Shown here: positions 1-40,427 of the stretch, piece by piece
Numbering within the stretch: the stretch's first letter is position 1
Layout of the letters: each line of letters starts with the position of its first letter
NCBI GenBank assembly: GCA_000388065.2
Contig: KB932205.1
Source: Fonticula alba ATCC 38817
Lineage: Eukaryota > Protista > Nucleariida
DNA length: 40,427 nt
Strand: one strand, 5' to 3'
The notes under the pieces: model-generated
Databases searched by the model: none
What the model saw: only the letters and a program-made list of their open reading frames with translations
Told to the model about the DNA's origin: nothing
Program-made: the position numbers and the translations under genes

Positions 1-559
1 CCAGCCGGAACCTCAGCACCGACCGGTCGTCGGTCCTCGTCAACACCCTGCCCGAGCTGAATGCCATGACCGTGCGGTACGCGGCGCCGGAGGTGATCGG
101 CGCCTTCCAGCGGGGCATTTCGCTGGACCGGGCGGCCCTGCTGCCGGCGGACATCTTCAGCGCGGCGGTCATGCTCTGGGAGTGCCTCGCACGCGACAGG
201 CCCTGGACAGGTACTGGCGCTTTGCCCTCGCGGGCACCTTTGGCCCATGGCTTGCGCGCGGCTCCATCCCCACCTTCTTTGGCACTGATCTGTTGCTCCC
301 TTCCCTTGCTCCCCGCGTGCGCTTCCTGTCGCACCCTCCAGACTTGGACTTCGGCGACATCCGGGCCTCCGTGCTGGCCGGCCATCGGCCCAGCATGGAG
401 GTCCTGGTGCTGCCCGGCCGGTGTTTCGCCAACGCGCCGGACCTGTTGGAGGCTGCTTGGCAGGCGGACTTCGAGCGCCGGCCCACCGCCGGGCTTTTCC
501 GCCAGCGGTGCGCCGCATTCTACTTGGCGGCTGGCGGGCTGGCCCGGCCAGTGCCCTAG
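1..559 (+). CDS. Gene A, 3' end of a receptor kinase paralog (kinase subdomains VII-XI); join(<1..210,342..559)
   Basis: The frame from base 3 reads SRNLSTDRSSVLVNTLPELNAMTVRYAAPE...PADIFSAAVMLWECLARDRPWT. After a GT..AG intron it continues DLDFGDIRASVLAGHRP...RPTAGLFRQRCAAFYLAAGG, with TAG at 557-559. The spliced product aligns without gaps to the intronless C-termini of genes B and C. Confidence 0.9.
   Translation, partial: QPEPQHRPVVGPRQHPARAECHDRAVRGAGGDRRLPAGHFAGPGGPAAGGHLQRGGHALGVPRTRQALDRYWRFALAGTFGPWLARGSIPTFFGTDLLLPSLAPRVRFLSHPPDLDFGDIRASVLAGHRPSMEVLVLPGRCFANAPDLLEAAWQADFERRPTAGLFRQRCAAFYLAAGGLARPVP
211..341 (+). other. Phase-1 intron in gene A kinase C-lobe
   Basis: Donor is GTACTG and acceptor is pyrimidine-rich ...CCCTCCAG. 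Splicing joins the two frames that the ORF track lists separately (66.. and 182..). Confidence 0.88.
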
Positions 560-800
560 ATGCATCGGGCCTGTCCCCTCTCGGGCGATGCGCGCCGGAC
601 GGCACGGCTGCACATGCGGCCGCGCCGGCGACCGGGGCACCCAGGGGCGGCCTGCTCGGGGGAGAAGAGCGCGCCCCGGCCAGAGGCAGGCATGCGGGCG
701 GGAAATCCCCGCATCACGCACAGGCAGGCAAGCAAGCAGGGCTCGCCCTGTCGGATCCCCACCCCCCGTTTCGGACGCTCCAATACCAAGCCATCCGCCA

Positions 801-802
<2 letters not shown>

Positions 803-843
<41 letters not shown>
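803..843. repeat. (CA)n microsatellite downstream of gene A
   Basis: Read directly from the sequence. Confidence 0.97.
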
Positions 844-2438: not shown

Positions 2439-4238
2439 ATGGAGCTGTCCGCCGGCCGGCGGCCCAGACACCAGCGGGCCCAGATGCCGCCGCCTGCTGG
2501 CCGACCACTGCCGCTGCCGCTGCCGCTGCCGCTGCCGCTGCTGCCGCTGCTACTGCTGGTGATGATGCTGCTGGCCGATGTTCCCGGATTGCTATCGGCC
2601 GAGCTTCCGCTCTATGCAGGCCACCATCCCCTGATGGACATCCAAAGGCCCATGTCGGCCTTCACCCCCGCCGGCATGCCCACCCACTGGATCGGCCCCG
2701 ACGGCAGCCGGTCCTACTCGCTCTATCAGCAGCAGCTGTGGCTGTCTATCAGCCGGGAAATTCGCACCGGCCTGTTCATCCCCCCGGAGCACTACCTCCA
2801 GGTGTCCAGCNNNNNNNNNNNNNNNNNNNNNNNNNNNNNNNNNNNNNNNNNNNNNNNNNNNNACTGGATCGGCCCCGACGGCAGCCGGTCCTACTCGCTC
2901 TATCAGCAGCAGCTGTGGCTGTCTATCAGCCGGGAAATTCGCACCGGCCTGTTCATCCCCCCGGAGCACTACCTCCAGGTGTCCAGCCCCCGGGGCGAGC
3001 TCGGCCCCATCGCCACGAAGGTCATCCTCCCGGCGGAGGGATATAACATCCCGGCCATCCTGGAGATGTCCTCCACCGAGGTGGGCCTCTTTCAGGCGAA
3101 CGAGGTGCACAGCCTCCCGGGGCCTCAGTTCCAGGAACTTTTGGCCTCGGCCGCGAGCTCTCCAAACCTGGTGGACATTCTCATCAGCACCCGTGGCATC
3201 AGCTCCGGGGTCCCGCACCTGGTGTTCTACAGATCGGAAGAGCGTCGTGATCCCGGCCATCCTGGAGATGTCCTCCACCGAGGTGGGCCTCTTTCAGGCG
3301 AACGAGGTGCACAGCCTCCCGGGGCCTCAGTTCCAGGAACTTTTGGCCTCGGCCGCGAGCTCTCCAAACCTGGTGGACATTCTCATCAGCACCCGTGGCA
3401 TCAGCTCCGGGGTCCCGCACCTGGTGTTCTACGTGGAGGTGGATGCCACCCTGGGCTTGACTTCGCACCAGGTACCCCGGACGCTGGATCCATCCTGGCC
3501 GGCCCTCGGCACCCCCGGCCCGGGGCGGTCCTTCTTCCTCGCCTCCGAAACGACTCTCAGCCATGTGACCCTGGACAGTGCGTCGCAGGTGCTCATCCAG
3601 GACTTCCCCCTCAGTCGGGCGGCTTTCGACATGGTGGCCACCCGGCTCCTGTCCCTGCCCGCGGCCTGCCCGGCTGGGGACCTGGTCTTCCTCTTTGACG
3701 ATGCCTCGGTCCGGGTGGAGGTCTGCTTTGACGCTGCCAATGGCCCGGTGGATACCATCACCGGGCGACTTCCCCCCGAGGCGTCAGCCAATGGCCGCTT
3801 CATCAATCCCGGGCTCAAGTCCATGAGGCAGCTTCTCCCCTTTCTCTACTACCTGGATGTTGATGGCCCGGAAAGCTCCCTCTGGCGGGCCGAGGTCAGC
3901 CTCCCCGGGGGGCTTGTTTGGCGCCGGGTTATTCCCCCCTCGCTGGCGGCCGGTCTACTTTCCAGCGCCTACTTGGCGCTCCTTGACACGACTCGCGGCC
4001 TGGAATGGACCTTGATCGTCAATGGTGCAGCTCTTTGGGATGAGGTGGCCTTCGGCTGCCATACCGATCCCACCATTCAGTGCGACCAGCCCTCTCTCAC
4101 CGACCGGACCACGTATGGCTGGTTGTGCAAGTTCGGCCGCGATACCAGCCCCTTCGTGGAGGATGACCGTCTTTGTGCTGGCTGCGCGGCTGGCCGCTAT
4201 CTCGACCGCGACTCCTGTGCGTGCCCCGGCCACATGTG

Positions 4239-4274
<36 letters not shown>

Positions 4275-7200
4275 TCTGCCTCTACCTCTGGCTGTGCCTC
4301 TGGCTCTGCATCTCTCTCTCTCTCTCTCTCTCTCTTCATCTCTCCCTCTCTCCCTCTCTCTCTTCCCATCTCCCCCCCTCTCTTCCCATCTCCCCCCCCT
4401 CTCTTCCCATCTCCCCCCCTCTCTTCCCATCTCCCCCCCTCTCTTCCCATCTCCCCCCCTCTCTTCCCATCTCCCCATTTTTACTTGCGCCCTTGCCCGC
4501 GTCCCCTAACCTTGGCGTGTGACCCCGTCCCGGGGCCCGGGCCTCCCTGGCTACCAGCCTCCCGGGAATGCATCCTCTGTATGCCCGGCTGTCAGACATG
4601 CCTGCCAGACGGCTGTCTTGTCTGCATGGATGGACTTCTGCCGCAGGCCAGCGGCCCGAATGGGCAAATCGAGTGTGTGGTCACCTGCTCGCCGGGTTTT
4701 CATGAATTGGCCGGGGCCTGTCACACAGCCCCGAGCCCGGAGCTCACGACATCCGGCAACCAGATGGAATCCTTCCCCGGCATTGCTCAGGTCATCACGG
4801 TAAGCGATACCCACCTTGTGGCTGGCAGTGTGGCTGGCTCGGCCATTCTCCTGCCCAGGGCCATGCAGAACCCGGGCTCCCCGCGCGCTGGACTCCTGCT
4901 CTTCAGCAAGGCGGGCCCCGTTCACCTGGCCCCAGGTGCCTCGAACGGCCAGCCCAAAGACCTGCCAGCCACCCCGGCGGTCGACTTCCTCACAAGCCCT
5001 GGCATCCAGAAGATCACTTTCTACGCGGAAATCGGCCCTGTCCTGTACAGCAAGCATGCCATCATGGGCGTGGCCTTTTGCAGCGACCACAATGGCGGGG
5101 GGTACTTCACCATCCACTGCCCAGTCGCCAACAATGGCAGCCCCTCGGACGCCTGCTTCATCAACAATGCGCGAGACATCCCCTCACTGATCGGCAATTG
5201 CCGGGCCGCCCGGCGTATGGGCCCTCGGCATATGGCATTGGAGGCGGCCACCGGCATGTCCTTCCTGCTTGAGCTCCTGGACGGTGGAGCTCTCAGTGTC
5301 CGTGAGGGACCAGCCGGCAGTCTGGCTCCGCTGCTCGCCGACATGCACTTCTCTATGGAGCCATCGATCGGCCCATTCAGATGGACCCTATGGATGGATC
5401 GGGATGGCATGGGAACCTTCTTCCCGACCGACATGCCGATGAATGATCCCCGACATGCGGCCCTCGAAAGCCAGGCCTGGCAGCCCATTGGCAGCCCCGG
5501 CACAGTGGTTCTCCTCCGCACGGGCACCGCCCCCGATGCCGGGTTCGAACTGGTGGTCACGGCCTTCCGCGGCCACAGCACCTGGGAGGCGGCCATCCTG
5601 CCACGCGGGCTGATCCCCGGGAACCGGAATCGCCAGATGCCGCTGGCGCCGCAGGTCCTCACCCGATGGACCACCCTGCCGGACTTGGTCTCGCTGTCCA
5701 TCCGGGCCATCGACCTCTTCACGCATCCGATGTACCCGTCCGCCTTGCTGCTGACGTCCAGCGACGTCTTTGCCGTGGCTCCCCTGCGGTGCCCCGGCGC
5801 CGGCGCCCCATGCGCCTTTGTCCCGGCCAGCGTCTACATCCAGCCCAACACCCTGCTTGCGCCGGGGTGGACCGGGGTCGTGGTGCGGCCCAGCCCGCCG
5901 ACCGACGACGACCCGCCGAACCTCATGCTGTCGTTGCTGATTTCCTCGAACGTGGACAGCTCCATCTCTCGGATGGACTTCCTGTCGGAATGCCCGCCCG
6001 GCACCTTTGGCCCGGGCTGCGACCCTTGTGACCCGGCTTGTCTCGAGTGCACGGGCCCCGGGCCGGCGGCCTGCACCTCCTGCCAGGCGGCCCTCGATTT
6101 CGACCCCTTCAACTGCCTGGCCGAGTGCCCCCTCGGCTTGACCCTTGACTCGAGTCGCATTTGCCGATGCCACGAAACTTGCACCACATGCTCCATCGAG
6201 ACGCCGGGCGGCGGATACGAGTGCATCCGCTGCAATAAGGGATACGCCCGCGCCTCGGATCCCGCCACGCCGGAGCGGTGCTACCCCTGCTCGTCCCAGT
6301 GCTACGAGTGCCTGGTGGCGCAGGACCCGACGGCCTGCACCCGGTGTCTCCCGGGATCCTTCCTCGATGAGGGGGCCTGCAGGACCGACTGTCAGCCGGG
6401 CTACTGGGGTGACATCCTTTCGAACGAGTGTGTCGCCTGCCCGGATGGCTGCACCACCTGCATCTCCGGCCGCATTTGCTCCACCTGCCAAACTGGCTTC
6501 TTCCTGCCCTCGAGTTCGGACGTGTGCCAAGGGTGCTCGCCCTCGTGCGGCTCCTGCGCCGAGTCCACCAGCTGCATGACCTGCGCTCCGGGGCTCGTCT
6601 TCCTGGATCCCGACCCGTTGGCCGCTTCTCTTTGTGGGAGTGCCTGTCCGCCGGGCCTCTTCGCCGGGGCCACGCGGTGCACCGAGTGCGATGAAAGCTG
6701 TGCTCTGTGTCAAGGGACCGAAGCGGCCTGCGAGCAGTGCAGCGAGGGCTTCCGCTGGGCGTCCGCCCCTCCGGGCCCTGGTGCCACGGCCCCATGCCTT
6801 CCCTGTGATGTGGGCTGTGCCTCTTGCACGATGGACATCTGTCTGACATGCGTTCCTGGGCACTTCCTGACCATCGACGAGCAGTGTGTTTCCGCCTGCC
6901 CGTCGGGCTTCTGGGCCGACACCTGGTCCGGCCGGTGCATCCCCTGCCCGGCTGGCTGCGCGTCCTGCTCCTCGGCCAACATGTGCTCCGCCTGCCAGCC
7001 GGGCCACTTCCTGCCCCCCGGCTCGGGCACATGCCTGCCCTGCGACGGCTCGTGCGGCACCTGTGCCGAGGCCGGCACCTGCGCCACCTGCCGGCCGGGG
7101 CTGGTGTTCCTGCAGCCCGACCCGCAGGTGGCCTCCCTGTGCGCGAGCACCTGCCCCCCGGGCGAGTATGTCGGGCCCAACCGATGCACCGAGTGCCACA

Positions 7201-10200
7201 TCTCCTGCGCCCTGTGCGTCGGTGCAGCCGACCGGTGCCAGGTGTGCGGCCCGGGACACCGGTGGGCTGGGACCCCGCCGGCAGCCGGCGCCACGGGCCA
7301 GTGTGTCCCCTGTGATCCGGGTTGCGCCTCGTGCACGGCCGACCGGTGCCTGGCCTGCGAGCCGGGGCTCTTCCTCGACTCACACGGTGACTGCGTGAGC
7401 ACCTGCCCGGATGGGACCTTCGCCGACGCCGAGTCGTGCCAGCCGTGCGACCTGAGTTGCGCCACCTGCGTCGGGGGCGCCGCCGACCAGTGCGCCAGCT
7501 GCGCGGCCGGGCTGGACTTCGTGCCGCCCAGCGCCTCGGCCGGCACATGTGTGTCGGGCTGCCCGGAGGGCCAGTACCGGGACCGTGTCTCCGGCGACTG
7601 CTTGCCATGCGACGCGGCGTGCGCCACGTGCAATGGCCCGTCGGACAAGGACTGCTGGCGCTGCGCCAGCGGCGTGCTGCAGGACGGCGACTGCGTGCAG
7701 CACTGCGCCGCGAAGCATGTGGCCCTGGCCGGGCGGTGCCTGCCCTGCCATGCGTCGTGCGACCAGTGCGCCGGGACCCGGAGCACCGAGTGCCTGCCGG
7801 CCTGCCCGAGCGAGCTGCTGGCCCTGCCGGCCGGCGAGTCGCCCATGCGCTGCGTGCCGGCCTGCCCGGCGGGCCACACCCGCACCGCGGCCGGGTGCGC
7901 CAAGTGCGGCGACCACTGCGCCAGCTGCCCGGCGAGCGCGGCCACCTGCGCCCTGTGCGAGCGCGGGTGGCTGCTGGACGTGCCGAGCTGCGTGGCCTCC
8001 TGCCCGGTCGGATCCTCGCCCCAGGGCGGACTGTGCACCACCTGCCATGGGACCTGCACCACCTGCTACGGTCCCGAGTCGGACCAATGTCTGTCTTGCA
8101 GTGCGAGCTCCCCGCTGCTTGTGAACAACAGCTGCCATGCCGTCTGCCCGGCGGGCATGTACCGGAGCGAGCAAATCTGCCTTCCATGCAGCACCGCCTG
8201 CGCCGCCTGCTCGGGGCCCAGCTCCACCCATTGCACCGCCTGCCACATGGGCCGCGTTCTCCACGATGGCACCTGCTTTGCGGCCTGTCCGGGCGGGTTC
8301 TTTGCCGACGAGGGCGCCTGCCGCCCCTGCCAGGCCACCTGCCTGACGTGCGACTCGCCGAGCATGTGCACCTCCTGTGCCCCGGGCAAGCTCCTGGACC
8401 CGGCCGGGGCCTGTGTGGACGTCTGTCCCCCGGGGACCCACGTATGCGTCGCCTCCGGCCGGTGCATCGCCTGCCCGGACCACTGTGCGGCGTGCGACTC
8501 GCGCCGCGACTCGTGCGAGCCCGACTGCACGGCCTGCCGCGGGGGCTTTGTCCTGTCGGCCGGCCGGTGCATGGGGTCCTGCCCGGCCGGGGAGTTCCTC
8601 CCCCCCGGGGACGCGCCGGCCTGCCTGGCCTGTCGCGCCCCCTGCCGCACGTGCGCCAGCGCCGAGGACACATGCACCTCCTGCACCGAGGGGCTCCTGC
8701 AGCCGGATGCCGGCCTATGCGTATCTTCCTGCCCCCCGGCCCATGCGCCGTCCGGCGGCATCTGCCTGGCCTGCCCGGACAAGTGCGATGCCTGCCAGGC
8801 CGGCTCACAGCAACAACAACAGCAACCGGACTGTGCCCCGGGCCCGGGCGGGCTGCTGGTCTGCGCGCCGCTCGGGTCCTGCGCCCGCTGTGTGCCGGGG
8901 CTGCTGCTGCTGGACGGCCAGTCATGCGTGCCGGCATGCCCGGTTGGCACATTCCCCGACGACCAGGCCCCGGTGCCGGTGTGTGCCCGCTGCGATGCCA
9001 AGTGCAAGGCCTGCAGCGGGCCGGGCCCGGGAGATTGCGAACGCGTGCCCGGGTCGAGCTCATCGCGCATCGGCCTGGCNNNNNNNNNNGCGCTGCGCCA
9101 GCGGCGTGCTGCAGGACGGCGACTGCGTGCAGCACTGCGCCGCGAAGCATGTGGCCCTGGCCGGGCGGTGCCTGCCCTGCCATGCGTCGTGCGACCAGTG
9201 CGCCGGGACCCGGAGCACCGAGTGCCTGCCGGCCTGCCCGAGCGAGCTGCTGGCCCTGCCGGCCGGCGAGTCGCCCATGCGCTGCGTGCCGGCCTGCCCG
9301 GCGGGCCACACCCGCACCGCGGCCGGGTGCGCCAAGTGCGGCGACCACTGCGCCAGCTGCCCGGCGAGCGCGGCCACCTGCGCCCTGTGCGAGCGCGGGT
9401 GGCTGCTGGACGTGCCGAGCTGCGTGGCCTCCTGCCCGGTCGGATCCTCGCCCCAGGGCGGACTGTGCACCACCTGCCATGGGACCTGCACCACCTGCTA
9501 CGGTCCCGAGTCGGACCAATGTCTGTCTTGCAGTGCGAGCTCCCCGCTGCTTGTGAACAACAGCTGCCATGCCGTCTGCCCGGCGGGCATGTACCGGAGC
9601 GAGCAAATCTGCCTTCCATGCAGCACCGCCTGCGCCGCCTGCTCGGGGCCCAGCTCCACCCATTGCACCGCCTGCCACATGGGCCGCGTTCTCCACGATG
9701 GCACCTGCTTTGCGGCCTGTCCGGGCGGGTTCTTTGCCGACGAGGGCGCCTGCCGCCCCTGCCAGGCCACCTGCCTGACGTGCGACTCGCCGAGCATGTG
9801 CACCTCCTGTGCCCCGGGCAAGCTCCTGGACCCGGCCGGGGCCTGTGTGGACGTCTGTCCCCCGGGGACCCACGTATGCGTCGCCTCCGGCCGGTGCATC
9901 GCCTGCCCGGACCACTGTGCGGCGTGCGACTCGCGCCGCGACTCGTGCGAGCCCGACTGCACGGCCTGCCGCGGGGGCTTTGTCCTGTCGGCCGGCCGGT
10001 GCATGGGGTCCTGCCCGGCCGGGGAGTTCCTCCCCCCCGGGGACGCGCCGGCCTGCCTGGCCTGTCGCGCCCCCTGCCGCACGTGCGCCAGCGCCGAGGA
10101 CACATGCACCTCCTGCACCGAGGGGCTCCTGCAGCCGGATGCCGGCCTATGCGTATCTTCCTGCCCCCCGGCCCATGCGCCGTCCGGCGGCATCTGCCTG

Positions 10201-11743: not shown

Positions 11744-11775
<32 letters not shown>
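11744..11775. repeat. Poly-G tract (32 nt) downstream of gene B
   Basis: Read directly from the sequence. Confidence 0.9.
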
Positions 11776-21534: not shown

Positions 21535-21605
<71 letters not shown>

Positions 21606-22760: not shown

Positions 22761-22879
22761 CCGCTGCCTCTCGCTGCCTCTCGCTGCCTCTCGCTGCCTC
22801 TCGCTGCCTCTCGCTGCCTCTCGCTGCCTCTCGCTGCCTCTCGCTCCCTCTCGCTCCCTCTCGCTGCCTCGCGCTGCCC
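22761..22879. repeat. 10-bp minisatellite (TCGCTGCCTC), about 12 copies, ending ~70 nt upstream of the gene D start
   Basis: Seven consecutive perfect units at 22771..22840, with variant units on both sides. Confidence 0.95.
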
Positions 22880-22947
22880 GTCGCTCGCTCGGGTCTCGTG
22901 GCCCTGCGCCCCCCGGAGCCTCTCCCCCTGAGGCGGGCTCCCCACCA

Positions 22948-24491: not shown

Positions 24492-24534
<43 letters not shown>

Positions 24535-24701
24535 CGGGGGGAGGGGGGGGGGGGGTGGGGGCGGGGGGTGCGGCGGGGGGGGGGGGGGATCTAAGCCGCC
24601 GGCCCTGGCCCCTTGGAGCGTTGCACCTGTCGCCCTTCTGCCGCGGCCAAAATGCTCACCCACCTGCTCGCGGCACTGCCACTCCCACGCTGAAATCCAA
24701 T

Positions 24702-24735
<34 letters not shown>

Positions 24736-30700: not shown

Positions 30701-31436
30701 CCAGACGGACCTGGGGAGGCTCGTCCACTCGCGGGCCGATGTGCCCCTGGGCGACATGCTGCACATTTGCCACCAGTGGGCCGCCGGGCTGGACGCCATG
30801 CACAATGCCGGGGTGGCGCACTGCCACTTCGGGCCGGACAAGATCCTGGTGGCCCCCGCGGGCCCGGGGTCCTGGCTGGTGGCGGTCGGCGACCTGGCCG
30901 CATCGAGGAACCTCCGCCACCCGCCGGCCGAGGTGGCCCCCCCCGCGCCGGGCCCCCGGCGGGCGGCCTACACCGCGCCGGAGGTGCTGCTTGCCGCCGA
31001 GCGCCAGCGCCCGCTCAAAGCCGCCTTCCACCTGCCGGCCGATGTCTTTGCCGCGGCCGTGGTCCTATGGGAGTGCCTGACCCGCGCCATCCCCTGGGAG
31101 GGTAAGCAACCATCCGCCCTTTGCCTCTTCCTCCCCCCGCCGCACCCTGTCCAGGCACACAGCGCACTCCCCCCCCTCGCCCGGCCCTTACTGACTGCCC
31201 TGCTTGCGCACGCCCGCCCGCCAGGCTCCGACGCGGACACCATCAAGGCGGACGTGCGGTCTGGCCGGCGGCCGGACATGGCCGCGGCCGTGGCGCCCCT
31301 TCGCCAGCAGGCCCCGACCTTCGTCCAAGCCACCACCAACCTCCTCAACCAGGCATGGGACGAGGACCCCCTCGACCGGCCGTCAGCCATGGCCATCCAC
31401 CAGCTGTGCGCCGCTATCCTGGCCGCCCTGCCGTGA
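22948..31436 (+). CDS. Gene D: receptor pseudokinase paralog; join(22948..24316,25002..29051,29585..29691,29782..30169,30407..30464,30623..31101,31225..31436) = 2220 aa
   Basis: The signal is ILSLMLWLLLLLLGSGALA. All six introns have GT..AG ends with matching phases, and the total is 6663 nt. The spliced junctions reproduce paralog sequence: KLMKADAPDADVARRLQNEIALMW-LLRDQDNIVRMYGYS versus KKMRTEAMQPVHFLMFQNEVALMWLLRDAPNIVRLFGYS. The catalytic loop reads HCHFGPDK. Confidence 0.85.
24317..25001 (+). other. Gene D intron 1 (phase 1), containing poly-G 24493..24534, (CA)n 24702..24729 and N gap 24829..24879
   Basis: Donor GTGCGT, acceptor AACACAG. Splicing gives GFFRSPAPRGSYECRPC. Confidence 0.8.
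29052..29584 (+). other. Gene D intron 2 (phase 1) immediately before the TM exon; contains N gap 29182..29540
   Basis: Donor GTATGT, acceptor GGCCCAG. Splicing gives SQRLAIGLGIGFGLL. Confidence 0.8.
29585..29691 (+). other. Gene D transmembrane exon (AIGLGIGFGLLFLLMFLALILFLMLRLRRDQGLKEL), absent from the ORF track
   Basis: Hydrophobic helix followed by RLRR. LKEL matches gene B ALKEL. Confidence 0.88.
29692..29781 (+). other. Gene D intron 3 (phase 0)
   Basis: Donor GTACGG, CTGAC branch-like site, acceptor CCTGCAG. It contains an in-frame TGA. Confidence 0.82.
30170..30406 (+). other. Gene D intron 4 (phase 1; N gap 30255..30375)
   Basis: Donor GTTCGT, acceptor CTGCCAG. Splicing gives the same Lys-to-alphaC-Glu spacing as gene B. 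Confidence 0.85.
30465..30622 (+). other. Gene D intron 5 (phase 2, splits the Trp codon of ALMW-LLRD)
   Basis: Donor GTGCGT, acceptor GACCCAG. Confidence 0.88.
31102..31224 (+). other. Gene D intron 6 (phase 1, 123 nt, stop-free)
   Basis: Donor GTAAGC, acceptor CCGCCAG. It lies at the same PWx position as the gene A and gene E introns. Confidence 0.85.
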
Positions 31437-33805
31437 CCATGGCCGCCCCCATGCGCCGGGCGTCTCCTCGTGTCTATGCGATAAATCTTCACATCCCTCC
31501 GTCGTGTGGCCCCTCCGGGCCGGGGCGGGGGGGTCTTCTTTTTTCTTTTTTCTTTTTCATGGGCGCCCGCTTCTCCACATCGGCACAGGGCGCCCTGCCG
31601 GGCACGCGACCCAGCGGTGAATCGCCGCGGCGGCGCCCCGTGCGGGGCTGGCTGCCCTGCTCTGGAAGGGGACCACAGGGGGGGGGGGGGGGGGGGGGCG
31701 CACAGGATGCTCGGCCCTGCCCGCTGGCAAAGGCCACGCCCCGGGCGGCGCGCGCCGCTCCCGCACGCGAAGAGCACCCTCCCCGGGCCGGAGACCCGTC
31801 GCCGGGGCAGGCACCCGGGCAGGATCCAGGCACTGAGGGACCCCCAGCAGGGCATACTCGGGACTGTGCCGCCCTCGGCCCCCCGGGGTCGAACGAGCAG
31901 CACCGCCCACACCGGCCCCGGGAGAGCCGCCGCCGGATGCGCCCCGGGCCCCGGGGGCACGGATCGGGCCCCGGAGGCGGGCATGGTAGGCGTGTAATTT
32001 TTACTTTCGATCGCGCACAGCCACCCGCCCAACACGGGCAATCCGGAAGGGGGCCGAGCAAGCGGCCCGGGCGCAGGCCAAGGACGGGGAGGAACCAGCG
32101 CGCGCACGGCTGGCGGCAACACATGATGGAGCTCCTTCGCCCGGGCCGGCTCCCGACCTCCCGCGGAGCTTTGCGCCGGTTGGCCGCCGGACCGGAAAGT
32201 GCCCCGGGCGAGTGGGCGCCCCATGAAGCGAGGCCCCCCGGCAAGGTGGCCCAGTGCCTGGGCCAGGGCCGACGCGGCGAAGCGGCACGCAGGCTGGCTG
32301 GCCATCCCGCCGCCGGGCGCACAACACCGCCGCCTGCCCGTGGTGGCTACCCGGGGCCTGGGTAGCCCCCACGCACGGGCCGGTCTACTGGCGGGGATTT
32401 TGGCAGAACCCCGCCAGAATGCAAGTGCTGAAGGCCGTTAACTGGCCTGGGCGGGACTTAACCCAGGCCCGTGCCGCCCTCGGCCAGCGCCGGGCGCTGG
32501 CGCGCGAGCTTGGGGGTCCTCATGCCAAATATTTTGATTTAAAAACCCCATCCTCATTGGGATGCACTTTCCCAACCCGTCGATTTGATCCGTGATCCGG
32601 GGCCGGCGGGCCCGCAGGATCGGCCGGCCCATCGGCGCTCGTTGCATGCGCCTGCTCGGCTTGCTGCGGCTGGGGCGGCCCGCAGGCGCGCCGAGCGCCC
32701 GGAGCACCCCCACGACCGGGCCCGTTGTGGCGGACCACATTCCCAGTCTGGCGCACCTCTCCGGTCGTCCGCCGGCCGCTCCGTCCCTGCCTTGGTGCTC
32801 TTCTCGCCCCCGCTCGCCCCCTCCCTCATCTCCCCAGCTGCTGCCCACAGGGGCCGCTTCGTGCCCCCGGAGGAGGTGCTCCCACCTCCGGGACGGCACT
32901 TTCGCGGTTCGGGACCGCGTGTTCCTTTGTGTGCGGCCGCGGAGCTGGCTTTTTTCTTTTTTTTTTTCTCTCGGCCCACCCTCGTCCTGCAACGGGCTCA
33001 GCCCCCCCGATGGCGGCGCGCCGCCCCTCTCTCCCGGGCCCCAACACCGCCGGGCTCGCGCCACAAGGGACCGGCCGCTCGCTCCCGCGGGCGTCGGGAT
33101 CGCACCGACCAACTGCCGACGAATGCACGGGCCCGCCCCGGGAATGCCCCGCCGGCGCCGGGAAAAGATCCCGCCCCCTCCGAGCGCAGGGGCTTCCTGC
33201 TTGCATCCACGACCCAAGGACCCCGGGGCGGGAGCTTGTGGGATGCTCTTGCTGGCCGGCTCCTTGCGCGACACGCACCCGGCAGATGGCGACCGCGGGC
33301 CGTGGAACCGGGAGGAATGGCGGTCCCGCCGGGATCCCCATGCGGGGCTTGCTGGCCCGCCGCGCCAGACGCCCGGCCCTGGGGCGCCTGCTGGGGGGCC
33401 CCGGCGTGCCGAGCAGGGGTGGCGCGCATGCCCCGCTCTGTCACGCCCCTCCCGGGGGCAGGGCGCCCGGCGCGCCGGCGCGGCCGAGCTGCCCGTGGTC
33501 TGGCGCCCCGGCTTCGTGGGGGACCCGCGCGCGCGCGAAGACCACCCTTCACGCCGGCCGCGCCCTTGACCGGGGGTGTGTGCCCTGCGGTGGGTGGTCG
33601 TTCCCTTCCCGCTTGGCCCCTCATTCCCTCGGCCTCTTCAGGGGCCGGATGATTGCCGGCCCGCTGCACGCCGGGCCCGGGGGCATCCCACCTCAAAGCA
33701 TGCCCCGCGCCGGCCTCTTGCCTCCCCCCCNNNNNNNNNNNNNNNNNNNNNNNNNNNNNNNNNNNCCCCCCCGGACCCCTCGCACACCCCCCTCTTTCGC
33801 GCTTC

Positions 33806-36800
33806 ATGGTTGGCCCCGAGGGCCCGGCGACCGGGCGACGTGCTCGGCGGTGCCGCCACGGGCCACACCCCCGGTTGCCTCCCCTCCGCCCGATGGTCCT
33901 GTGCCTGGTGCTGTTTCTCCTCGGCCAGGCCCCGGCCCTGCTGGCCACCGGCGTCTACCTCCATGCGACCGCGAATCCCCTACTGTCGGCCTCTGGCCCG
34001 ACCACCCTGCTCACCCCGGGTGGCCGCGCCACAGTGGCCTACACACGCATTGACAGCAGCACATTCCATGTGCACATGCAGCACGACGCGATCGGTGGGA
34101 TTTCCGAAATGCGCTGGGGCGGTTTCCTGGACCCCACACGCACTGATGTAGTTGGATCTCCCCGGCCGGCCAGGCTCCCGGACGGCGAGATCATGTTCCT
34201 CCCCCGGCAGGACAACTTTGCTCCTCTCTTGGTGGAACACAATTCCGCCCATGTTGCCCTCTTCACCGGTGACGACGTCGTGGACTTCTCCCCGCCGGAA
34301 GTCCGGCTGCTGACCGGGGCGGCGTACTCCGAGTCGGAGGCCGGACTCCTGGGGCTGATAGGTGAGCCAGGTCAGACCCAGACACTATATGTGGCTCTAT
34401 TTTCCGGGGCCGCCCTTTCTTCGAAGATGTCTTTGCTATCGCCCTTCACCATGCCCGTGCATGCGGCCCCATGTCCTGGGAGGCGCTTTTTCTTGGCCTC
34501 CGGCAGTTGCTTCTACTCGATCATCCTTTCCGATGACCCGTTTCTCGCCATCGAATCAGATCCCCTTTCCGAAGACGTCTTGCAGGTGGTTGCAACACGC
34601 GTCCTCTCCTCGCAAGATGACTGCCCCCAGTCCGGAGATGTCATCCTCCTTCTGGCCGGGGGCACCGTGCGACTGTACAAGTGTGTTGCCACCAACCTGG
34701 AGGCGTCGCTATCATGGGGGGCGCCTTTGCCGGGCGAGTTGTCGGCCGCCAATGCCCGCGTCCTTGCGCCGCCAGCCGTCTCCATGGATGCGCCACTCGG
34801 GCACTTCTATGTCCTCTCCGACGGTCAGGCCCCGCCGGTGGCCTTTCGCGTGGATGTACAAAACAATGTCCTGCATTGGCGCAGGCTGGTTCTCCCACCG
34901 CTGGTTGACAGTGTGGCCGGGCTGCAGCTGGCTCGGCTGCGCACCAGCGCCTCGGCCAGCACCTGGGCCCTGACCACCGGCACTCTGCAGGTTCTCTTCG
35001 ATTCGGAGTCCTTCCTGTGCCCCGGCGATGGGACCATCATGTGCAATGGGCCCAACATGGAGACGCCCTTTCCGCTGGGATGGGGCTGCGTCGAGGGCCA
35101 AGTTGGCTCGCCCTTCCTGGTGGCCGACAAGCTTTGCGTCGGCTGCGGGGCCGGGCACCACCTCCAGCGGCCGGACGGTGCGTCATACCCGCCTCTCCCA
35201 TGTGTTCGGGGGTTTCCTTCGGTCGCTCTCTCTCCTTGTCGCGGGTTCATTGCCACTCCCCCGGTGGCCCGCGCCGCGGGGCCCCCCTCCTCGGCCTGGC
35301 CATGCCATGGGCATGCCAGGCAATGCCCCCGGGACAGCGCTGGCCCAAGCGGCGCCCGCACTAACACCCCTCCCCCCGCCGGCTGCCAGACGAGCTGCCC
35401 TTCCTCGGGACGGACCACGAATGCCAGCCCTGCCCGATGGCGCACTGCCTCACTTGCGACTCGGCCAATTGCCTCGTCTGCCAGGAGGGCTACCTATTGG
35501 AGGTCGATTCGTCCAGCCATCGCACCATCTGCGTCAGTCAATGCTCGGCGGGCTTCCTCCAAGAGGGGCTGGCCACCTGTCAGCCAAGCTGGTCGGCGCC
35601 ACCCCCGGCCAAGCTCCACATGCCCCAGGTGGAGGTCTTCCCCTCGCCACTTGACACCATGACCGTCATTGGAATGGGCTCGACCCTCCTTCAGCCCTCG
35701 AGCAGCTGGCCCTTCGCCCTGATTCCCTCCATGACGCCCGACCCCCATGCCGGTGTGCTGCTCTTCACCGGTGCGGGCAAAACCTTCCTCATGCCAGCCG
35801 CCGACATTGGCAACCCCCAAAAGGCCTCCCCGTCTCCGGTTGACCTCTTTGACTTCACGGACCTACCGGCCATGGCCGCCTTCGCCGAGGCTGGCCCCTT
35901 TGAATCGGCCGGGGCAAGCATCATGGCCATGGTCCTGTGTGACAGCATGGGCAAGGTGTATCACGCGTGGCTGGGCTGCTCAAGCATGGCGGCCTGTCCG
36001 GTGGACCAGCGGCTCCTCGAGCCGACCTTTCTCCTTCAGGAGGGCTGCTTGGGGCTTTGGCGCATGAGTGCCGAGCATATCCTCCTGCAGGCGGGCGATC
36101 AGTCGTACCGGGTTCTCCAGGCCATTGCCTCAAGCAGGGAGTTTGTTGTCCACCACTTCCCCGACGCCACAGGCCTGGCATACCTCCCGACCGTCGGGAC
36201 CTTTCGTTCCAGTCCAAGCTTCGGCGACTGGCTCGTGCTCGCCCAATCGCAGAAGAGACCGACCGCCGGGCCGATGGGCCTGGTTCTGGGGGATCCCGCT
36301 CGTTTGGCCACCCTCCGGGAGGACTTCCTGCAAGATGTCAACACGGCTGGCTTCAACCTCGCGCCGGTGCTCCTCCGCCGGGCCGACGCGCCCTGGAGCC
36401 AGGAGCTGGTGCTGGCGGCCCTTCACGACAGCCAGTGGGTGATCTTCCAGGTCCCGAAGGACATGCACCCGGCCGGGCGATCAACCGGCCTGCCCAGCAC
36501 CAAGCAGGTTTTGGGCACCCTGCCGGCGGGACTGCCAGCCCCGCCAGGTGCCGCCATGCTGCAGGCCCGCTTCCAGGCCGTTCCCCTGTACGAGCACCCG
36601 GCCTTCCCGTCGGCCCTGGTGCTGCTGGGGCGCTCCTTTGTGGGCATCTCGCTGTTCCACTGCCCCCACGGCGTGGCCGGCACTTGCTCCCTGCGGCCGG
36701 CCACCTTCACACAATGGCCCACGGCCCATGCGCTGCCGGGGAGCGTGGGCTTCTGGTGGCCGGTCATCGCCCGGCGCCCGGCGCTCGTCACCCCGGGCCC

Positions 36801-39460
36801 CTCCCTGGCCATGCTACTCCTGGCGCCTGGGCAGACGCTGTCGTCCGTCTCCCTGGATGCCCATTGCCCTGCCGGCTTCTTCGGGCTTGATTGCCAGCCC
36901 TGCGATGCTTTGTGTGCCGAGTGCACCGGGCCACTGCCGACCGATTGCACGGCATGCGCCATCTGGCTGCCCGGCGAGCAGGAGGCCTGCCTGGAGGCCT
37001 GTCCCAGCGGTCTGTATCCCGAGCTGGGCCACGCCGGTGCCTGTGTGTGCCATGAGCACTGCGACAATTGCCAGCCCAACAGCGATGGCCACCACACATG
37101 CATATCCTGCAAGAGTGGCCATGCTCCCAGCCTGACGGCGCCCGGCCAATGTGACGCCTGTGCTTCCGACTGCCTGGACTGCTCGGTCCCCGGGGCCCCG
37201 GATGCCTGTAGCGCCTGTGGCACGGGCACTTGGCTGGATGGCGGGGCCTGCGTGCCGGACTGCCCTCCCGGCACCTGGCCGCAGAGCCAGCCTCGCGAGT
37301 GCGTCCCCTGCCCGGCGGCCTGCGTCAGCTGCACCTCGTCGACTAGCTGCACCGGCTGCAAGGCTCGGCACTTCCTGGATGGAAACGGCCAATGCCGGGC
37401 TTGCGACGCCTCGTGCGCCGCGTGCGCCGGCCCCACCTCCTGTACAGCGTGCATGGGCGGCCTGGTCTTCCTGGCGACCGATGCGAACTTGGATTCGTTG
37501 TGCACGGCCACCTGCCCGCCCGGCGAATTGGCCGGGCCCCAGCGGTGTGCGGCGTGCGACCGGTCGTGCGCCCTGTGCGCCGGCCAGGAGGGCGCCTGCC
37601 AGGTGTGCGCCGTGGGCTTTCACTGGACCGCCGGGCCGCCGGTGGCCCCGGCCACCACGGCCAGCTGCTCGGCCTGCCCGGCCGGCTGCGCCGCGTGCAA
37701 TGCCTCTGGCAGGTGCTTCGCCTGCGACGCCGGGCTCTTCCTGCAGAGCAGCGGGTCGTGCGTGGCAGCCTGCCCGGGGCCGACCTTCGGCGACAGCGAC
37801 TCGCTCACGTGCCAGCCGTGCGACGTGAGCTGCGCCGCCTGCGCCGGGCCGGGCCCGGACGAGTGCACCGGCTGCGCGGCCGGGCTCGAGTTCCTCGACA
37901 CCGGCCCGGGCACGGGCAGCTGCCTGTCCGGCTGCCCGGAGGGCCAGCATCGCGACGCGGCCTCCGGCCTTTGCGTCGCCTGCCACCCGGCCTGCGCCAC
38001 GTGCAACGGCCCGACCGACCAGGACTGCTGGCGATGCCATGGCGCCGTGCTCCAGGGCGGCCAGTGCCTGCAGGCCTGCGCCGCCAGGCATGTGCCCCTG
38101 GCCGGCCGGTGCCTCCCGTGCCACGCATCCTGCGACCGGTGCGCCGGCGTGCGGTCGGTCGACTGCCTGCCGGACTGCGCACCCGACTTGCTGGCCCTGC
38201 CGGCCGGGGCGTCGCCCATGCGCTGCGTGCCGGCCTGCCCGGTGGGGTACCACACCTCGGGCGCCGGGTGCGCCCCCTGCGAGGCGCACTGCGCCAGCTG
38301 CCCGGCGAGCGCGGCCACCTGCGCCCTGTGCGAGCGCGGGTGGCTGCTGGATGCGCCGAGCTGCGTGGCCGAGTGCCCCGGCTCGTCGGTGGCCCTGGGC
38401 GGGCTGTGTGCCACCTGCCACGAGTCCTGCGCCACGTGCTACGGGCCGGAGCCGGAGCACTGCCTCACCTGCGGCCCGTCCGCCCCGCTGCACCTCGACG
38501 GTGCTTGCCTTGACGCCTGCCCGGATGGGACCTTCCGGTCGGGGTCCACTTGCCTCCCCTGCGGGGGCGCATGTGCCACATGCACCGGGCCCGGGCCCCA
38601 GGACTGTGTCACATGCGCCGGCGGCCGGCTGCTGCTGGATGGCGTCTGCCTGCCGGAGTGCCCGGCCGGGCGCTTTGCCGAGGCCGGCGTGTGCCAAGCC
38701 TGCCACGGGTCCTGCCACACGTGCGAGCAGGCCGCCGCCTGTGCCACCTGCCTGCCCGGGGCCCTGCTCCAGCCGAGCGGCCAGTGCGGGCCCGGCTGCC
38801 CGGCCGGCTGGGCTGCCTGCCCCTCGGCCGGCCAGTGCCAGGCCTGCCCGGCGCACTGCACCCAGTGCGCGGCCTTCGGGCCCGAGTGCGCGGCCGGCTG
38901 CACCGCCTGCGAGGCCGGCTTCGTCCTGTCCGGCGGCCGGTGCGCGGCCGGCTGCCAGCCCGGCGAGTATGCCCCGGCCGGGTCTGCCACCTGTGCCCAG
39001 TGCCATGGCGGCTGCGCCGCCTGCTTCGGCCAGGCCACCCACTGCACGGCCTGCGCCCTGGGGCTGCTCCATTGGGAGCTCGGCCAGTGTGTCGGGGCCT
39101 GCCCGGCCGGCCATGCCCCCTGGCAGGGCGTCTGCCTGGGCTGCCCGGCCGGCTGCGAGCAGTGCACCGCCGGCGCCGGGCAGCCCGCCTGCCAGGGCCA
39201 CCCGGACGGGTCGGTCACCTGTCCGGAGGTGGCCGCCTGCGACCGGTGCGCCGGTGGGCTGCTCCTGCACCTGGGCCGGGCGTGTGTGTCGGAATGCCCG
39301 GCCGGGTTCTTCGCCGATCTGGCCGCCATGCCGCCGGCCTGCGGCCCCTGCCATGCGACCTGCGCGGCCTGCGTCGGGCCGGCCGTCGCCGAGTGCCTGA
39401 CGCCACCGAGGAAGGCCGGCGGCCGGCTGGGGCTGATCCTCGGCCTGGCGCTGGGCCTGG

Positions 39461-39504
<44 letters not shown>

Positions 39505-40427
39505 GTGCGCCGGCGGGCCCGCATGAAGCCCCCCCCCGCGGACCCGGCCGATGGGGATGCCACCATGCTGAACACCATCATGGAGCTGGCCCTGCCCGGG
39601 GCCATCCTGGTGGACCTGGCCGCGGACTTCCACCCGCTGGCCGAGTCGGCCCTCGGGGCCGGGGCCCAGGCGTCGGTGTACGCGGCGCAGGCCGTCGGGG
39701 CCGGCATCTCCGGCCGACTGGGCTGCCCGGACGTGGTGGCCATCAAGCGCATGAAGGTGCAAGCCATGAAGCCGGTGCACCATGCCATGTTCCAAAATGA
39801 GGTGGCCCTCATGTGGCTCCTGCGCGAGCATGCCCATGTGGTCCGGCTGTTTGGCTACTCGCAAGCCCCGCCGGGCCTGGTGATGGAGTGCTTCCAGACG
39901 GACCTCGGCACGCTGCTGCACTCGGACATCCCGCTGACCTCCTGCCAGGTGCTGGACATCTGCCAGCAGTGGGCCTCCGGGCTGGAGGCCATGCACGCGC
40001 ACGGCATCGCCCACTGCGACCTGAAGCCGGGCAACGTGTTTGCCAGCCGGCGCCCGGACGGCGGCTGGCGCGCGGCCCTCGGCGACCTGGGCACCAGTCG
40101 CAATCTCAATACCGACCGGTCGTCGGTCCTCGTCAACCAGGCGCCGGAGTTGAATGCCCTGACCGCGCGCTACGCCTCGCCCGAGATCTTCGTCACCCTG
40201 CAGCGCGCGGTGGCCCTCGACCGGGAGGCCTTCCTCCCGGCGGACATCTACGCCGCGGGGGTCCTCCTGTGGGAGTGCCTGGCCCGGTCGGTCCCCTGGT
40301 CCGGTTCGTTGCTCCCCCGGGCCCGGTGCCCAGCCGCGCGGCCGCCGATGCGCCCGCACACACACACACACACACACACGCGCATGCACGCATTTCCGCC
40401 TGCTCGCCCCCCGCGCCGCCCGCCCCC
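33806..40427 (+). CDS. Gene E: giant receptor Ser/Thr kinase paralog, 3'-truncated; join(33806..35177,35390..40303,...), more than 2095 aa
   Basis: MVGPEG...RPMVLCLVLFLLGQAPALLA is the signal. I translated exon 2 in parts by hand (frame 1); it contains domain B, the Cys-rich stalk and the TM GRLGLILGLALGLG(L)14V. Kinase motifs are GAGAQASV, VAIK, HCDLKPGN (40012..40035), DLG and YASPE. The exact start codon is less certain because of the gap at 33731..33765. Confidence 0.85.
35178..35389 (+). other. Gene E intron 1 (phase 1)
   Basis: Donor GTGCGT, branch CTAAC at 35361-35365, acceptor CTGCCAG. Splicing gives HHLQRPDDELPFLGTDHECQPC. Confidence 0.87.
39463..39501 (+). repeat. (CTG)13 microsatellite encoding the poly-Leu core of the gene E TM helix
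   Basis: Thirteen uninterrupted CTG codons followed by CTT. Confidence 0.93.
40304..40427 (+). other. Start of the gene E terminal intron (phase 1), running off the window; (CA)n at 40357..40379
   Basis: Donor GTTCGT follows ...VPWS-G, the same position as the introns in genes A and D. Kinase similarity stops here. Confidence 0.8.

What the first reader, a model, noticed from the sequence alone, without database searches (positions are those of the whole stretch)
1..40427. Tandem array of giant receptor kinases with variable tips and conserved signalling ends, including one catalytically dead member
Seen in sequence: five co-oriented paralogs 1.5-3.1 kb apart fill the window and run off both edges. 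Domains A and B share only short motifs between neighbours, while stalk and kinase stretches are near-identical in patches. Established: single-pass receptor kinases are a hallmark of animals and plants and are essentially absent from yeasts and filamentous fungi, and clustered non-RD receptor kinases are associated with pathogen recognition in plants. Inference: this is an independently evolved recognition locus for prey, pathogen or kin discrimination, with long stalks presenting diversified sensor domains. If the organism is Fonticula, a role in aggregation is an obvious hypothesis. The individual genes probably exist in databases only as generic 'TKL kinase' entries.
Basis: partly seen in the sequence, partly recalled or inferred. 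Interest (0 to 1): 0.82.

Follow-up and report, generated by a model that had tools for sequence, protein, structure and literature searches.

The report
Fonticula double-propeller receptor kinase array
This stretch of the slime-mould-like amoeba Fonticula alba holds five neighbours from a head-to-tail run of at least 17 large surface-receptor genes, each with two very different sensor heads on a long rod and a similar signalling end, one of them catalytically dead but still used; the family seems unique to this organism and undescribed, and what it senses is unknown.

Summary
The window is Fonticula alba scaffold KB932205.1. It carries five co-oriented paralogues 1.5-3.1 kb apart, part of an array spanning at least 196 kb.

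Each gene encodes a signal peptide, two seven-bladed beta-propellers (A and B) joined by a Cys-rich linker, an 810-1020 aa furin-like repeat stalk, one TM helix and a divergent Ser/Thr-type kinase.

Heads are 13-40% identical between neighbours, kinases 63-75%. Elsewhere in the family, kinases reach 91% identity over heads of about 30%.

Part of this gradient is not selection on the heads. Synonymous differences are saturated in the heads (pS 0.5-0.63) but only 0.21-0.38 in stalk and kinase patches, which fits gene conversion of the 3' ends.

G3 is a predicted pseudokinase (HCHFGPDK in place of H[CRG]DLKPxN). RNA contigs show it spliced into an intact 2163-aa ORF.

Assembly gaps:
- Both G3 3'-end gaps lie in RNA-proven introns.
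- The gaps at 16096 and 24829 lie in modelled introns.
- The unlisted gap at 33731 lies upstream of G4's ATG.
- The two G1 gaps are flanked by exact duplicates that look like assembly artefacts.

About 80 Fonticula gene models carry the propellers. All 20 checked hits are Fonticula alba, and no paper describing the family turned up. The recognition role is untested. Neighbouring windows of this scan noted the same array, without follow-up.

The parts
1..559 (+). G0: the 3' end of the upstream paralogue (deposited product P0070, 1691 aa). It covers the kinase C-lobe, with a small intron at about 215-335 after 'PWTG', and the stop codon at 557-559.
2484..11586 (+). G1 receptor kinase (HCD). Exon 1 is 2484-4216, the CT-rich intron 4217-4557, and exon 2 4558-11586. 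After collapsing the duplicates the product is 2316 aa: propeller A 2592-4047, propeller B 4746-5990, stalk 5991-10488, TM 10501-10587, kinase 10696-11553.
2686..2987 (.). Exact 125-nt duplicate (2686-2810 = 2863-2987) on both sides of the N gap at 2811-2862. It is probably an unmerged contig overlap. Its period of 177 nt keeps the reading frame.
3048..3432 (.). Exact tandem duplication of 202-nt period with no gap. If real, it frameshifts G1 inside propeller A. Removing one unit restores the ORF.
7658..10511 (.). Exact 1422-nt duplicate (7658-9079 = 9090-10511) on both sides of the N gap at 9080-9089. It causes the apparent frame change and the overlong stalk of G1.
14671..21411 (+). G2 receptor kinase (HGD), identical to deposited P0001, 2189 aa. 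Exon 1 is 14671-16078, the intron 16079-16249 (it contains gap 16096-16105), and exon 2 16250-21411. Domains: propeller A 14827-15912, linker 15913-16434, propeller B 16435-17733, stalk 17734-20316, TM 20329-20415, kinase 20524-21381.
22948..31436 (+). G3 receptor pseudokinase, identical to deposited P0085, 2163 aa, in nine exons: 22948-24316, 25002-29051, 29585-29691, 29782-29800, 29894-29920, 29999-30169, 30407-30464, 30623-31101 and 31225-31436. The gaps at 24829-24879, 29182-29540 and 30255-30375 all lie in introns.
30819..30842 (+). G3 degenerate catalytic loop, HCHFGPDK. The catalytic Asp is replaced by His, the loop Lys by Gly and the Mg-binding Asn by Lys. The beta3 Lys (VAIK), the alphaC Glu and the DxG Asp are kept. 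Coordinates are approximate: they were set's translation and were not computed separately.
33893..40427 (+). G4 receptor kinase (HCD). Exon 1 is 33893-35177, the intron 35178-35389, and exon 2 runs from 35390 to about 40301. A kinase-domain intron after 'PWSG' then runs off the window. Domains: propeller A 33941-35008, propeller B 35611-36864, stalk 36865-39414, TM 39427-39516, kinase from 39622.
33731..33765 (.). Assembly gap that is missing from the program's list. It lies upstream of G4's start codon.

Best explanation
The window is a segment of a large head-to-tail array of type I receptor kinases that appears specific to Fonticula alba.

Shown:
- Each gene encodes a signal peptide and two unrelated seven-bladed beta-propellers joined by a Cys-rich linker.
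- These sit on a rod of furin-like (CxxC) repeats 810-1020 aa long, followed by one TM helix and a very divergent Ser/Thr-type kinase.
- The heads of all members are about 30% identical, with synonymous sites saturated.
- Stalk and kinase patches have two- to three-fold fewer synonymous differences.
- G3 has lost the catalytic Asp, Lys and Asn, sits on a four-fold longer branch in the kinase tree, and is transcribed and correctly spliced.

Inferred:
- The propellers bind extracellular ligands and the rod holds them far from the membrane.
- Ligand-driven pairing of receptors activates the kinase by trans-phosphorylation.
- The signalling ends are kept alike by gene conversion between array members, while the heads escape it. 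The result is many different sensors on one common signalling chassis.
- G3 acts as a non-catalytic partner or scaffold of active paralogues, in the manner of ErbB3.
- The most likely ligands are cues from bacterial prey or from other Fonticula cells, but nothing here tests that.
For: - Identity and array: the G2 product is 100% identical to a deposited Fonticula alba protein.
- Architecture: Pfam Pkinase scores 85.6 bits against a cut-off of 31.7. VSP (43.2 vs 31.4) and Furin-like_2 (30.5 vs 28) also pass. The signal peptide and TM come from hydropathy.
- Heads: the AF2 model of the head has pLDDT 80.5 and pTM 0.79 and is all-beta. Each half aligns to about 300-aa seven-bladed propellers at Z about 16 and to double-propeller proteins.
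- Divergence gradient.
- Synonymous differences: pS is 0.51-0.63 in the heads against 0.31-0.38 in the kinase among G1, G2 and G4. In a neighbouring pair on another scaffold, two 150-codon blocks (one stalk, one kinase) have pS 0.21-0.22.
- A 181-nt kinase stretch is 95% identical between two adjacent array genes whose stalks are 67% identical.
- No pair of heads exceeds 57% identity.
- G3: motif census, long branch of 1.54 against a median of 0.37, spliced RNA contigs with zero RNA depth over the adjacent intergenic DNA, and an intact 2163-aa ORF.
- Lineage restriction.
Against: - No ligand, localisation, kinase activity or phenotype is known. The function is argued from architecture alone.
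- Lower pS in the kinase could partly reflect stronger codon or GC constraints rather than gene conversion. With GC3 of 0.85-0.90, NG86 estimates are crude, and no formal conversion-tract test was run.
- Expression was seen clearly only for G3. In the four small 2012 RNA libraries that held G3's exon 2, only one showed up for G2's exon 2, with 10% of its sampled words. G4's head had almost no RNA depth.
- G1 is intact only if three exact duplications are artefacts, which was not checked with reads.
- Only 20 of the propeller-bearing hits were checked for organism, so relatives in other nucleariids cannot be excluded.
Confidence: 0.6

Rival explanations
1. Kin or self recognition locus. The heads would be polymorphic between strains and mediate allorecognition during collective invasion or sorocarp formation, as TgrB1/TgrC1 do in Dictyostelium.
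For: DNA contigs of an about 98% identical wild relative (run X9) differ from G4's propeller A at 11 of 624 bases, the same rate as the intergenic DNA (14 of 783). Of the 9 listed coding changes, 6 are non-synonymous and 3 synonymous, and six cluster within 33 nt. Toret et al. 2022 (PMC9097593) state that the link between cells in collectives is unknown and that obvious cadherins and integrins are lacking.
Against: The sample is only nine substitutions from 2-4x contigs of unknown origin. Diversity here lies among about 80 ancient paralogues rather than among alleles. No partner-ligand gene pair is evident.
Confidence: 0.12
2. Mainly a structural or adhesive surface coat. The Cys-rich rods and propellers would form a glycocalyx-like or adhesive layer, VSP-like. 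The heads would diverge because they are weakly constrained, and the kinase would give only generic contact signalling.
For: There is a Pfam match to Giardia VSP repeats. About a dozen family members have the A-B heads without a kinase. Head dN and dS are both saturated, so no positive selection can be shown.
Against: More than 50 members keep an intact kinase with all catalytic motifs. The four full genes here keep uninterrupted ORFs of more than 2000 codons. Both propellers remain confidently foldable with conserved Cys and core positions.
Confidence: 0.15
3. Largely decaying duplicates or an assembly illusion. The array would be inflated by misassembly and many members would be pseudogenes.
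For: G1 carries three exact internal duplications, two of them at gaps. Many deposited models are fragments. Large N gaps sit in neighbouring genes.
Against: The five genes differ by about 70% in their heads, so they cannot be copies of one locus. G2, G3 and G4 have complete ORFs, and G3's nine-exon structure is confirmed by RNA.
Confidence: 0.05

Closest known systems
Entamoeba histolytica transmembrane kinases (EhTMKs, e.g. PATMK/TMK96)
   Same: Both are large amoebal families of type I proteins with a signal peptide, a CXXC-rich VSP-like ectodomain, one TM helix and a cytosolic kinase. Some members of each are possible pseudokinases. PATMK takes part in phagocytosis, and one B1 member is selectively expressed (PMC2211552; PMC2880585).
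   Different: PATMK's ectodomain is described as 25 CXXC repeats without propeller heads. The Fonticula proteins carry two N-terminal seven-bladed propellers and are about twice as long. No kinase homology to EhTMKs was tested or seen here, and the organisms are unrelated, so this is an analogue and not a family assignment.
ErbB/EGFR family, with ErbB3 as the pseudokinase partner
   Same: Both have furin-like Cys-rich modules in the ectodomain (Furin-like_2 above its cut-off; GF_recep_IV is a weak hit) and are single-pass. In both, a catalytically impaired paralogue sits among active ones (recalled knowledge for ErbB3).
   Different: The Fonticula proteins have no receptor L domains. The kinase has a Ser/Thr-type catalytic loop (DLKPxN) and is not a tyrosine kinase. 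The stalk is far longer, and GF_recep_IV scores below its curated cut-off.
Met/RON receptor kinases and plexins (Sema propeller + PSI + stalk)
   Same: Both present a seven-bladed extracellular propeller, followed by a small Cys-rich module, on a stalk (recalled knowledge).
   Different: There is no Pfam Sema or PSI match, and no semaphorin-type chain appears among the top fold matches. Fonticula has two propellers, not one, and FU repeats in place of IPT domains.
Plant RLK/RLP clusters (non-RD pattern-recognition receptors)
   Same: Both are large lineage-specific expansions in tandem arrays, with variable ectodomains, conserved kinases, kinase-less relatives, pseudokinase co-receptors and non-RD members.
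   Different: The kinase is not of the IRAK/Pelle type: the nearest solved structure is B-Raf at only E 4e-14. The ectodomains are propellers plus FU repeats, not LRR, LysM or lectin domains. The family mixes RD and non-RD members.

Membership tests
Eukaryotic protein kinase superfamily (active) | A Pkinase profile match plus the beta3 Lys (VAIK), alphaC Glu, HxD catalytic Asp with the downstream Lys/Asn, DxG Asp and APE. | tested here: met
   G2 scores 85.6 bits on Pkinase against a cut-off of 31.7. All motifs are present in G1, G2 and G4. G0 could not be assessed because only its C-lobe lies in the window.
Eukaryotic protein kinase superfamily (active), applied to G3 | Catalytic-loop Asp, Lys and Asn. 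| tested here: not met
   G3 reads HCHFGPDK, so all three residues are replaced, while VAIK, the alphaC Glu and the DxG Asp are kept. It is a predicted pseudokinase; no activity assay was done.
TKL group (the deposited label) | Kinase domain groups with the Raf, MLK, LISK, IRAK or STKR families. | tested here: inconclusive
   The best solved relative is B-Raf, but only at E 4e-14, followed by MNK2 and ULK1. The protein atlas returns generic kinases. Nothing outside Fonticula scores better than E 4e-10. No kinase-group classifier was available.
Receptor tyrosine kinases | Tyrosine-kinase catalytic loop HRDLAARN. | tested here: not met
   The loop is H[CRG]DLKPxN, which is the Ser/Thr type. The motif rule itself is recalled knowledge.
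Plant RLK/Pelle-IRAK | Kinase belongs to the IRAK/Pelle clade. | tested here: not met
   No IRAK, Pelle or plant RLK chain appears among the 60 best solved-structure matches. This is similarity only; no joint tree was built.
Entamoeba TMK family | Signal peptide, CXXC-repeat ectodomain, single TM and cytosolic kinase. | tested here: met
   VSP scores 43.2 bits against 31.4. The stalks hold 47-63 CxxC motifs each, and the SP and TM are present.
Entamoeba TMK family | Common descent of the kinase and ectodomain with EhTMKs. | not tested
   No EhTMK sequence was retrieved, and none appeared among the hits. The extra double-propeller head is absent from the PATMK description.
EGFR/insulin-receptor ectodomain | Receptor L domains flanking a furin-like domain, plus GF_recep_IV. 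| tested here: not met
   There is no Recep_L_domain hit. GF_recep_IV scores 16.7-20.8 bits against a cut-off of 29.5. Only Furin-like_2 passes, at 30.5 against 28.
WD40 / Sema / YWTD / NHL propeller families (heads A and B) | A sequence-profile match to the family. | tested here: not met
   There is no Pfam hit in residues 1-1000. Profiles of A and of B find nothing in the PDB at E<=0.1. A against B gives an hhalign probability of 0.2%. Only the generic seven-blade fold is shared.

The most novel reading that the evidence does not exclude
Fonticula, the amoeboid sister lineage of fungi, has independently built a large recognition-receptor repertoire on a cassette principle. About 80 genes (more than 1% of its gene models) sit in arrays spanning about 200 kb or more. 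In them, gene conversion keeps one signalling chassis (rod, TM, kinase) uniform, while two orphan propeller heads are held apart as a library of sensors. Members are differentially or selectively expressed, and an expressed pseudokinase serves as a shared co-receptor. The system would underlie bacterial-prey sensing and/or the density- and bacteria-dependent collective behaviour whose signalling is unknown.
Probability: 0.3. Interest if true: 0.85.

Novelty: new variant of a known kind. Interest (0 to 1): 0.62.

Why it matters
Single-pass receptor kinases are regarded as hallmarks of animals and plants, and a 72-genome survey found no receptor-kinase architectures in fungi (PMC6733946). Fonticula is the aggregative amoeba on the fungal side of the opisthokonts. 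Its collective invasion depends on bacteria and cell density, and the authors state that its signalling is unknown and that obvious cadherins and integrins are lacking (PMC9097593).

A family of about 80 surface receptor kinases with orphan double-propeller heads is therefore an obvious candidate set for prey and cell-cell sensing. It is also another independent case of receptor-kinase expansion linked to a social lifestyle.

The pattern of saturated heads and homogenised signalling ends gives a tractable system for studying how receptor repertoires are kept diverse at one end and uniform at the other.

Tried and rejected
- **Bacterial genome collection:** The search for related loci on genome contigs returned nothing, as expected, because that collection holds only bacteria and archaea. 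It was a wasted scan.
- **Internal duplication of the heads:** propeller A and B profiles show no similarity (hhalign probability 0.2%), so this idea was rejected.
- **A named propeller family for the heads:** Pfam, PDB profile searches, Foldseek (PDB, AFDB, Atlas) and VIA-align give only a flat list of generic seven-bladed propellers.
- **dN/dS on the heads:** pS and pN are both at saturation, and no pair of heads exceeds 57% identity. Positive selection can therefore be neither shown nor excluded from the paralogues.
- **Shared promoter element:** no 9-12-mer is shared by three or more of the four 800-nt upstream regions.
- **RNA genes:** there are no tRNA or Rfam matches in the window.
- **G3 as a dead pseudogene:** the in-frame stop near 29746 and the frame changes suggested this, but RNA contigs place them all in introns, so it was rejected.
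- **Literature:** seven full-text searches found no description of the family.


Full report
**Identity and layout**

The window is about 70% G+C. The long ORF at 13024-21411 carries a protein kinase domain (Pkinase 85.6 bits, cut-off 31.7) behind weak furin-like (GF_recep_IV) and VSP-type Cys-rich repeat matches.

A tblastn of its product against the window finds five co-oriented copies. Their kinase segments lie at 3-541, 10573-11574, 20374-21408, 30010-31427 and 39505-40305. No family match falls on the minus strand.

A database search shows that the G2 product is 100% identical to a 2189-aa 'TKL protein kinase [Fonticula alba]'. It also returns 45 Fonticula alba relatives, 41 of them with a recorded kinase domain. 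The window corresponds to about 117,450-157,876 of scaffold KB932205.1, assembly GCA_000388065.2.

**Gaps, tested first**

There are seven N runs, one more than listed: 33731-33765 is the extra one.

- *G1 gaps.* The gaps at 2811-2862 and 9080-9089 are each flanked by exact duplicates that end at the gap edge: 2686-2810 = 2863-2987, and 7658-9079 = 9090-10511. A third exact duplication, of 202-nt period, lies at 3048-3432 and has no gap.
- As assembled, the 202-nt and 1432-nt periods shift the reading frame. Collapsing all three gives one uninterrupted 2316-aa ORF with a signal peptide. I read them as assembly artefacts, but this was not checked with reads. The deposited G1 model of 2578 aa therefore probably includes duplicated sequence.
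- *G2 gap.* 16096-16105 lies in the annotated 171-nt intron. My two-exon model reproduces the deposited protein exactly.
- *G3 gaps.* RNA contigs from two libraries show a spliced transcript. Its introns at 29052-29584 and 30170-30406 contain the gaps at 29182-29540 and 30255-30375.
- The same contigs define further introns at 29692-29781, 29801-29893, 29921-29998, 30465-30622 and 31102-31224, all with GT..AG ends. They also define two micro-exons of 19 and 27 nt.
- RNA depth is zero across the adjacent intergenic DNA (31,750-32,949 and 33,350-34,149, with only traces between), while DNA depth there is 110-185. The RNA signal is therefore not DNA carry-over.
- The spliced CDS is 2163 codons with no stop and equals deposited P0085. 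The gap at 24829-24879 lies in G3's first intron, which is inferred.
- *G4 gap.* 33731-33765 lies upstream of the ATG.
- Several of the gaps sit in or beside low-complexity intron sequence, such as a poly-G run and CA repeats.

**Protein anatomy**

All four full genes encode the following:
- an N-terminal hydrophobic signal sequence;
- about 360 aa of domain A;
- a Cys-rich linker of about 115 aa, which is where the conserved phase-1 intron falls;
- about 430 aa of domain B;
- 810-1020 aa of CxxC-rich repeats, with 47-63 CxxC motifs and 128-168 Cys;
- one TM helix followed by RRR;
- a kinase.

An AlphaFold2 model of P0001:30-1010, built on 22 paralogues, is confident (pLDDT 80.5, pTM 0.79) and all-beta. 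Domains A and B each superpose on about 300-aa seven-bladed propellers at Z about 16. The list of matches is flat: LGI1 EPTP, Sec12, RbBP5, UTP18 and others. The pair as a whole matches double-propeller proteins such as DDB1, SF3B3, WDR6 and coronin-7, but only at TM about 0.2.

The only high-TM matches in the AlphaFold DB cluster library are two rows whose organism is masked. One, A0A058Z171 (TM 0.77), is the Fonticula paralogue P0059.

A and B have no Pfam match and no sequence relative in the PDB. They show no detectable similarity to each other.

**The kinase**

The catalytic loop is H[C/R/G]DLKPxN, which is the Ser/Thr type. DLG stands in place of DFG, and VAIK, the alphaC Glu and APE are present. 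Across the 43 kinases with an intact catalytic loop, 25 are HCD, 14 HRD and 4 HGD. G1, G2 and G4 here are non-RD.

The nearest solved structure is B-Raf at only E 4e-14. Searching with the kinase alone finds nothing outside Fonticula better than E 4e-10. 'TKL' is therefore a nominal label.

G3 reads HCHFGPDK and VGDLAAS. Its catalytic Asp, loop Lys and Asn are all replaced, which is unique in the census. P0023 is a second degenerate member.

In a kinase tree, G3's terminal branch is 1.54 against a median of 0.37. G1, G2 and G4 fall in a well-supported subclade of 13 that includes genes from other scaffolds, and G1's nearest relative lies on another scaffold. Neighbours are thus not each other's closest kin.

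**Divergence gradient and its cause**

| Comparison | Heads A/B | Stalk | Kinase |
|---|---|---|---|
| Among G1-G4 | 13-40% | 35-72% | 63-75% |
| 36 pairs across the family (means) | 33% (A), 35% (B) | – | 65% |
| Members on the 619-kb scaffold | 29-34% | – | 85-91% |

- Kinase identity is nearly uncorrelated with head identity, r about 0.2.
- No two heads in about 80 gene models exceed 57% identity.
- Among G1, G2 and G4, synonymous differences are at saturation for this GC3 (0.85-0.90) in the heads, with pS 0.51-0.63. They are 0.31-0.45 in one stalk patch and 0.32-0.38 in the kinase.
- In an adjacent pair on another scaffold, pS drops to 0.21-0.22 in two 150-codon blocks, one in the stalk and one in the kinase.
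- Two adjacent genes just upstream of the window share 181 nt of kinase at 95% identity, while their stalks are 67% identical.

The simplest reading is gene conversion, or unequal exchange, that homogenises the 3' chassis while the heads stay outside it. Because the heads are saturated, paralogue dN/dS says nothing about positive selection.

One small population-type datum exists. Low-depth contigs of an about 98% identical relative in an unrelated organism's DNA run differ from G4's propeller A at the intergenic rate. Six changes are non-synonymous and three synonymous. This is incompatible with strong purifying selection, but the sample is far too small to show diversifying selection.

**Family size and distribution**

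A profile of the A-B head searched against 1.84 billion representative proteins gives 97 hits at E<=1e-30. Those that cover the propellers number about 80 gene models. Roughly 55 of them have a kinase, and about a dozen have A-B without one. Many are fragments of a gappy assembly.

All 20 hits that I checked are Fonticula alba. Locus tags run to at least H696_06349, so the family makes up more than 1% of gene models.

On KB932205.1, family genes were found from 93,088 to 289,344, all on the + strand. Two stretches in between were not sampled. One further family gene (P0027) lies on the opposite strand about 2 Mb away on the same scaffold. A second array lies on KB932210.1.

**Expression**

The four small 2012 RNA libraries hold 92-96% of the sampled words of G3's exon 2. 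Only one of them was listed for G2's exon 2, holding 10% of its words. G4's head has almost no RNA depth. In these libraries the pseudokinase is therefore the best-represented member tested, and members differ in expression. The growth conditions of the libraries are unknown.

**Comparison with known systems**

By architecture, the nearest described system is the Entamoeba transmembrane kinase family: signal peptide, CXXC-repeat ectodomain, TM and kinase, with PATMK implicated in phagocytosis (PMC2211552). That family lacks propeller heads and is unrelated by descent as far as was tested here.

The furin-like modules and the dead paralogue recall ErbB receptors and ErbB3. The propeller-plus-Cys-module head recalls Met and the plexins. 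The clustered, partly non-RD expansion with kinase-less relatives recalls plant RLK/RLP loci. Defining features of each of these families were tested and not met; see the membership table.

No paper describing this Fonticula family was found. Kiss et al. 2019 report no receptor-kinase architectures in fungi. Toret et al. 2022 state that signalling in Fonticula's collectives is unknown.

First-stage notes on neighbouring windows of this scan describe the same array and the same gradient, without follow-up.

**Verdict**

The array is much larger than the window. G1's oddities are probably assembly artefacts.

The 'variable tips, conserved ends' pattern is real, but it owes much to homogenisation of the ends. 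The recognition function remains a reasonable but untested inference.

Noticed in passing
window 29585-29998: G3's juxtamembrane region is encoded with two micro-exons of 19 nt (29782-29800) and 27 nt (29894-29920), supported by RNA contigs. G3 has eight introns, whereas G2 has one.
   Followed up: yes
window 215-335, 31102-31224, 40302-40427: An intron just after the conserved 'PW.G' of the kinase C-lobe is present in G0, G3 and G4 but absent in G1 and G2. Intron presence therefore varies among the paralogues.
   Followed up: partly
window 24462-24588; also 11750-11773 and 31667-31690: There are very long poly-G tracts (127 nt in G3's first intron), as well as CT and CA microsatellites in introns and spacers. 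Several assembly gaps sit in or beside such low-complexity sequence.
   Followed up: partly
window 28950-34940 (run X9; also X8, X10-X14): DNA runs labelled as another, much-sequenced organism, plus soil and sediment metagenomes, hold 8-28% of the sampled words of G3's exon 2. Run X9, when laid on the window, gives 2-4x contigs 98-99% identical to it, so a wild Fonticula-like relative is present in at least that sample.
   Followed up: partly
window 34399-34431: Six of the nine listed differences between the reference and the wild relative in G4's propeller A fall within 33 nt, and four of the six change the amino acid. This may be a variable loop, a conversion tract or a mis-laid paralogue contig.
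   Followed up: no
Fonticula proteins P0059, P0061, P0062, P0071, P0072, P0075 (other scaffolds): Family members of 1100-1300 aa carry the A-B double propeller, little or no stalk and no detected kinase. They are receptor-like proteins without a signalling end, or truncated gene models.
   Followed up: partly
L003 10001-16556 vs 17947-25563 (just upstream of the window): Two adjacent array genes share a 181-nt kinase stretch at 95% identity, although the rest aligns at 67% or not at all. Large N gaps of 189 and 1950 nt hide the remainder of their kinase regions.
   Followed up: partly
window 30750-30949 and 31550-31749: DNA contig depth spikes (about 1240 and 2170 against about 150) at a conserved kinase patch and at a poly-G tract. 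Contigs of paralogues or repeats probably pile up there.
   Followed up: no
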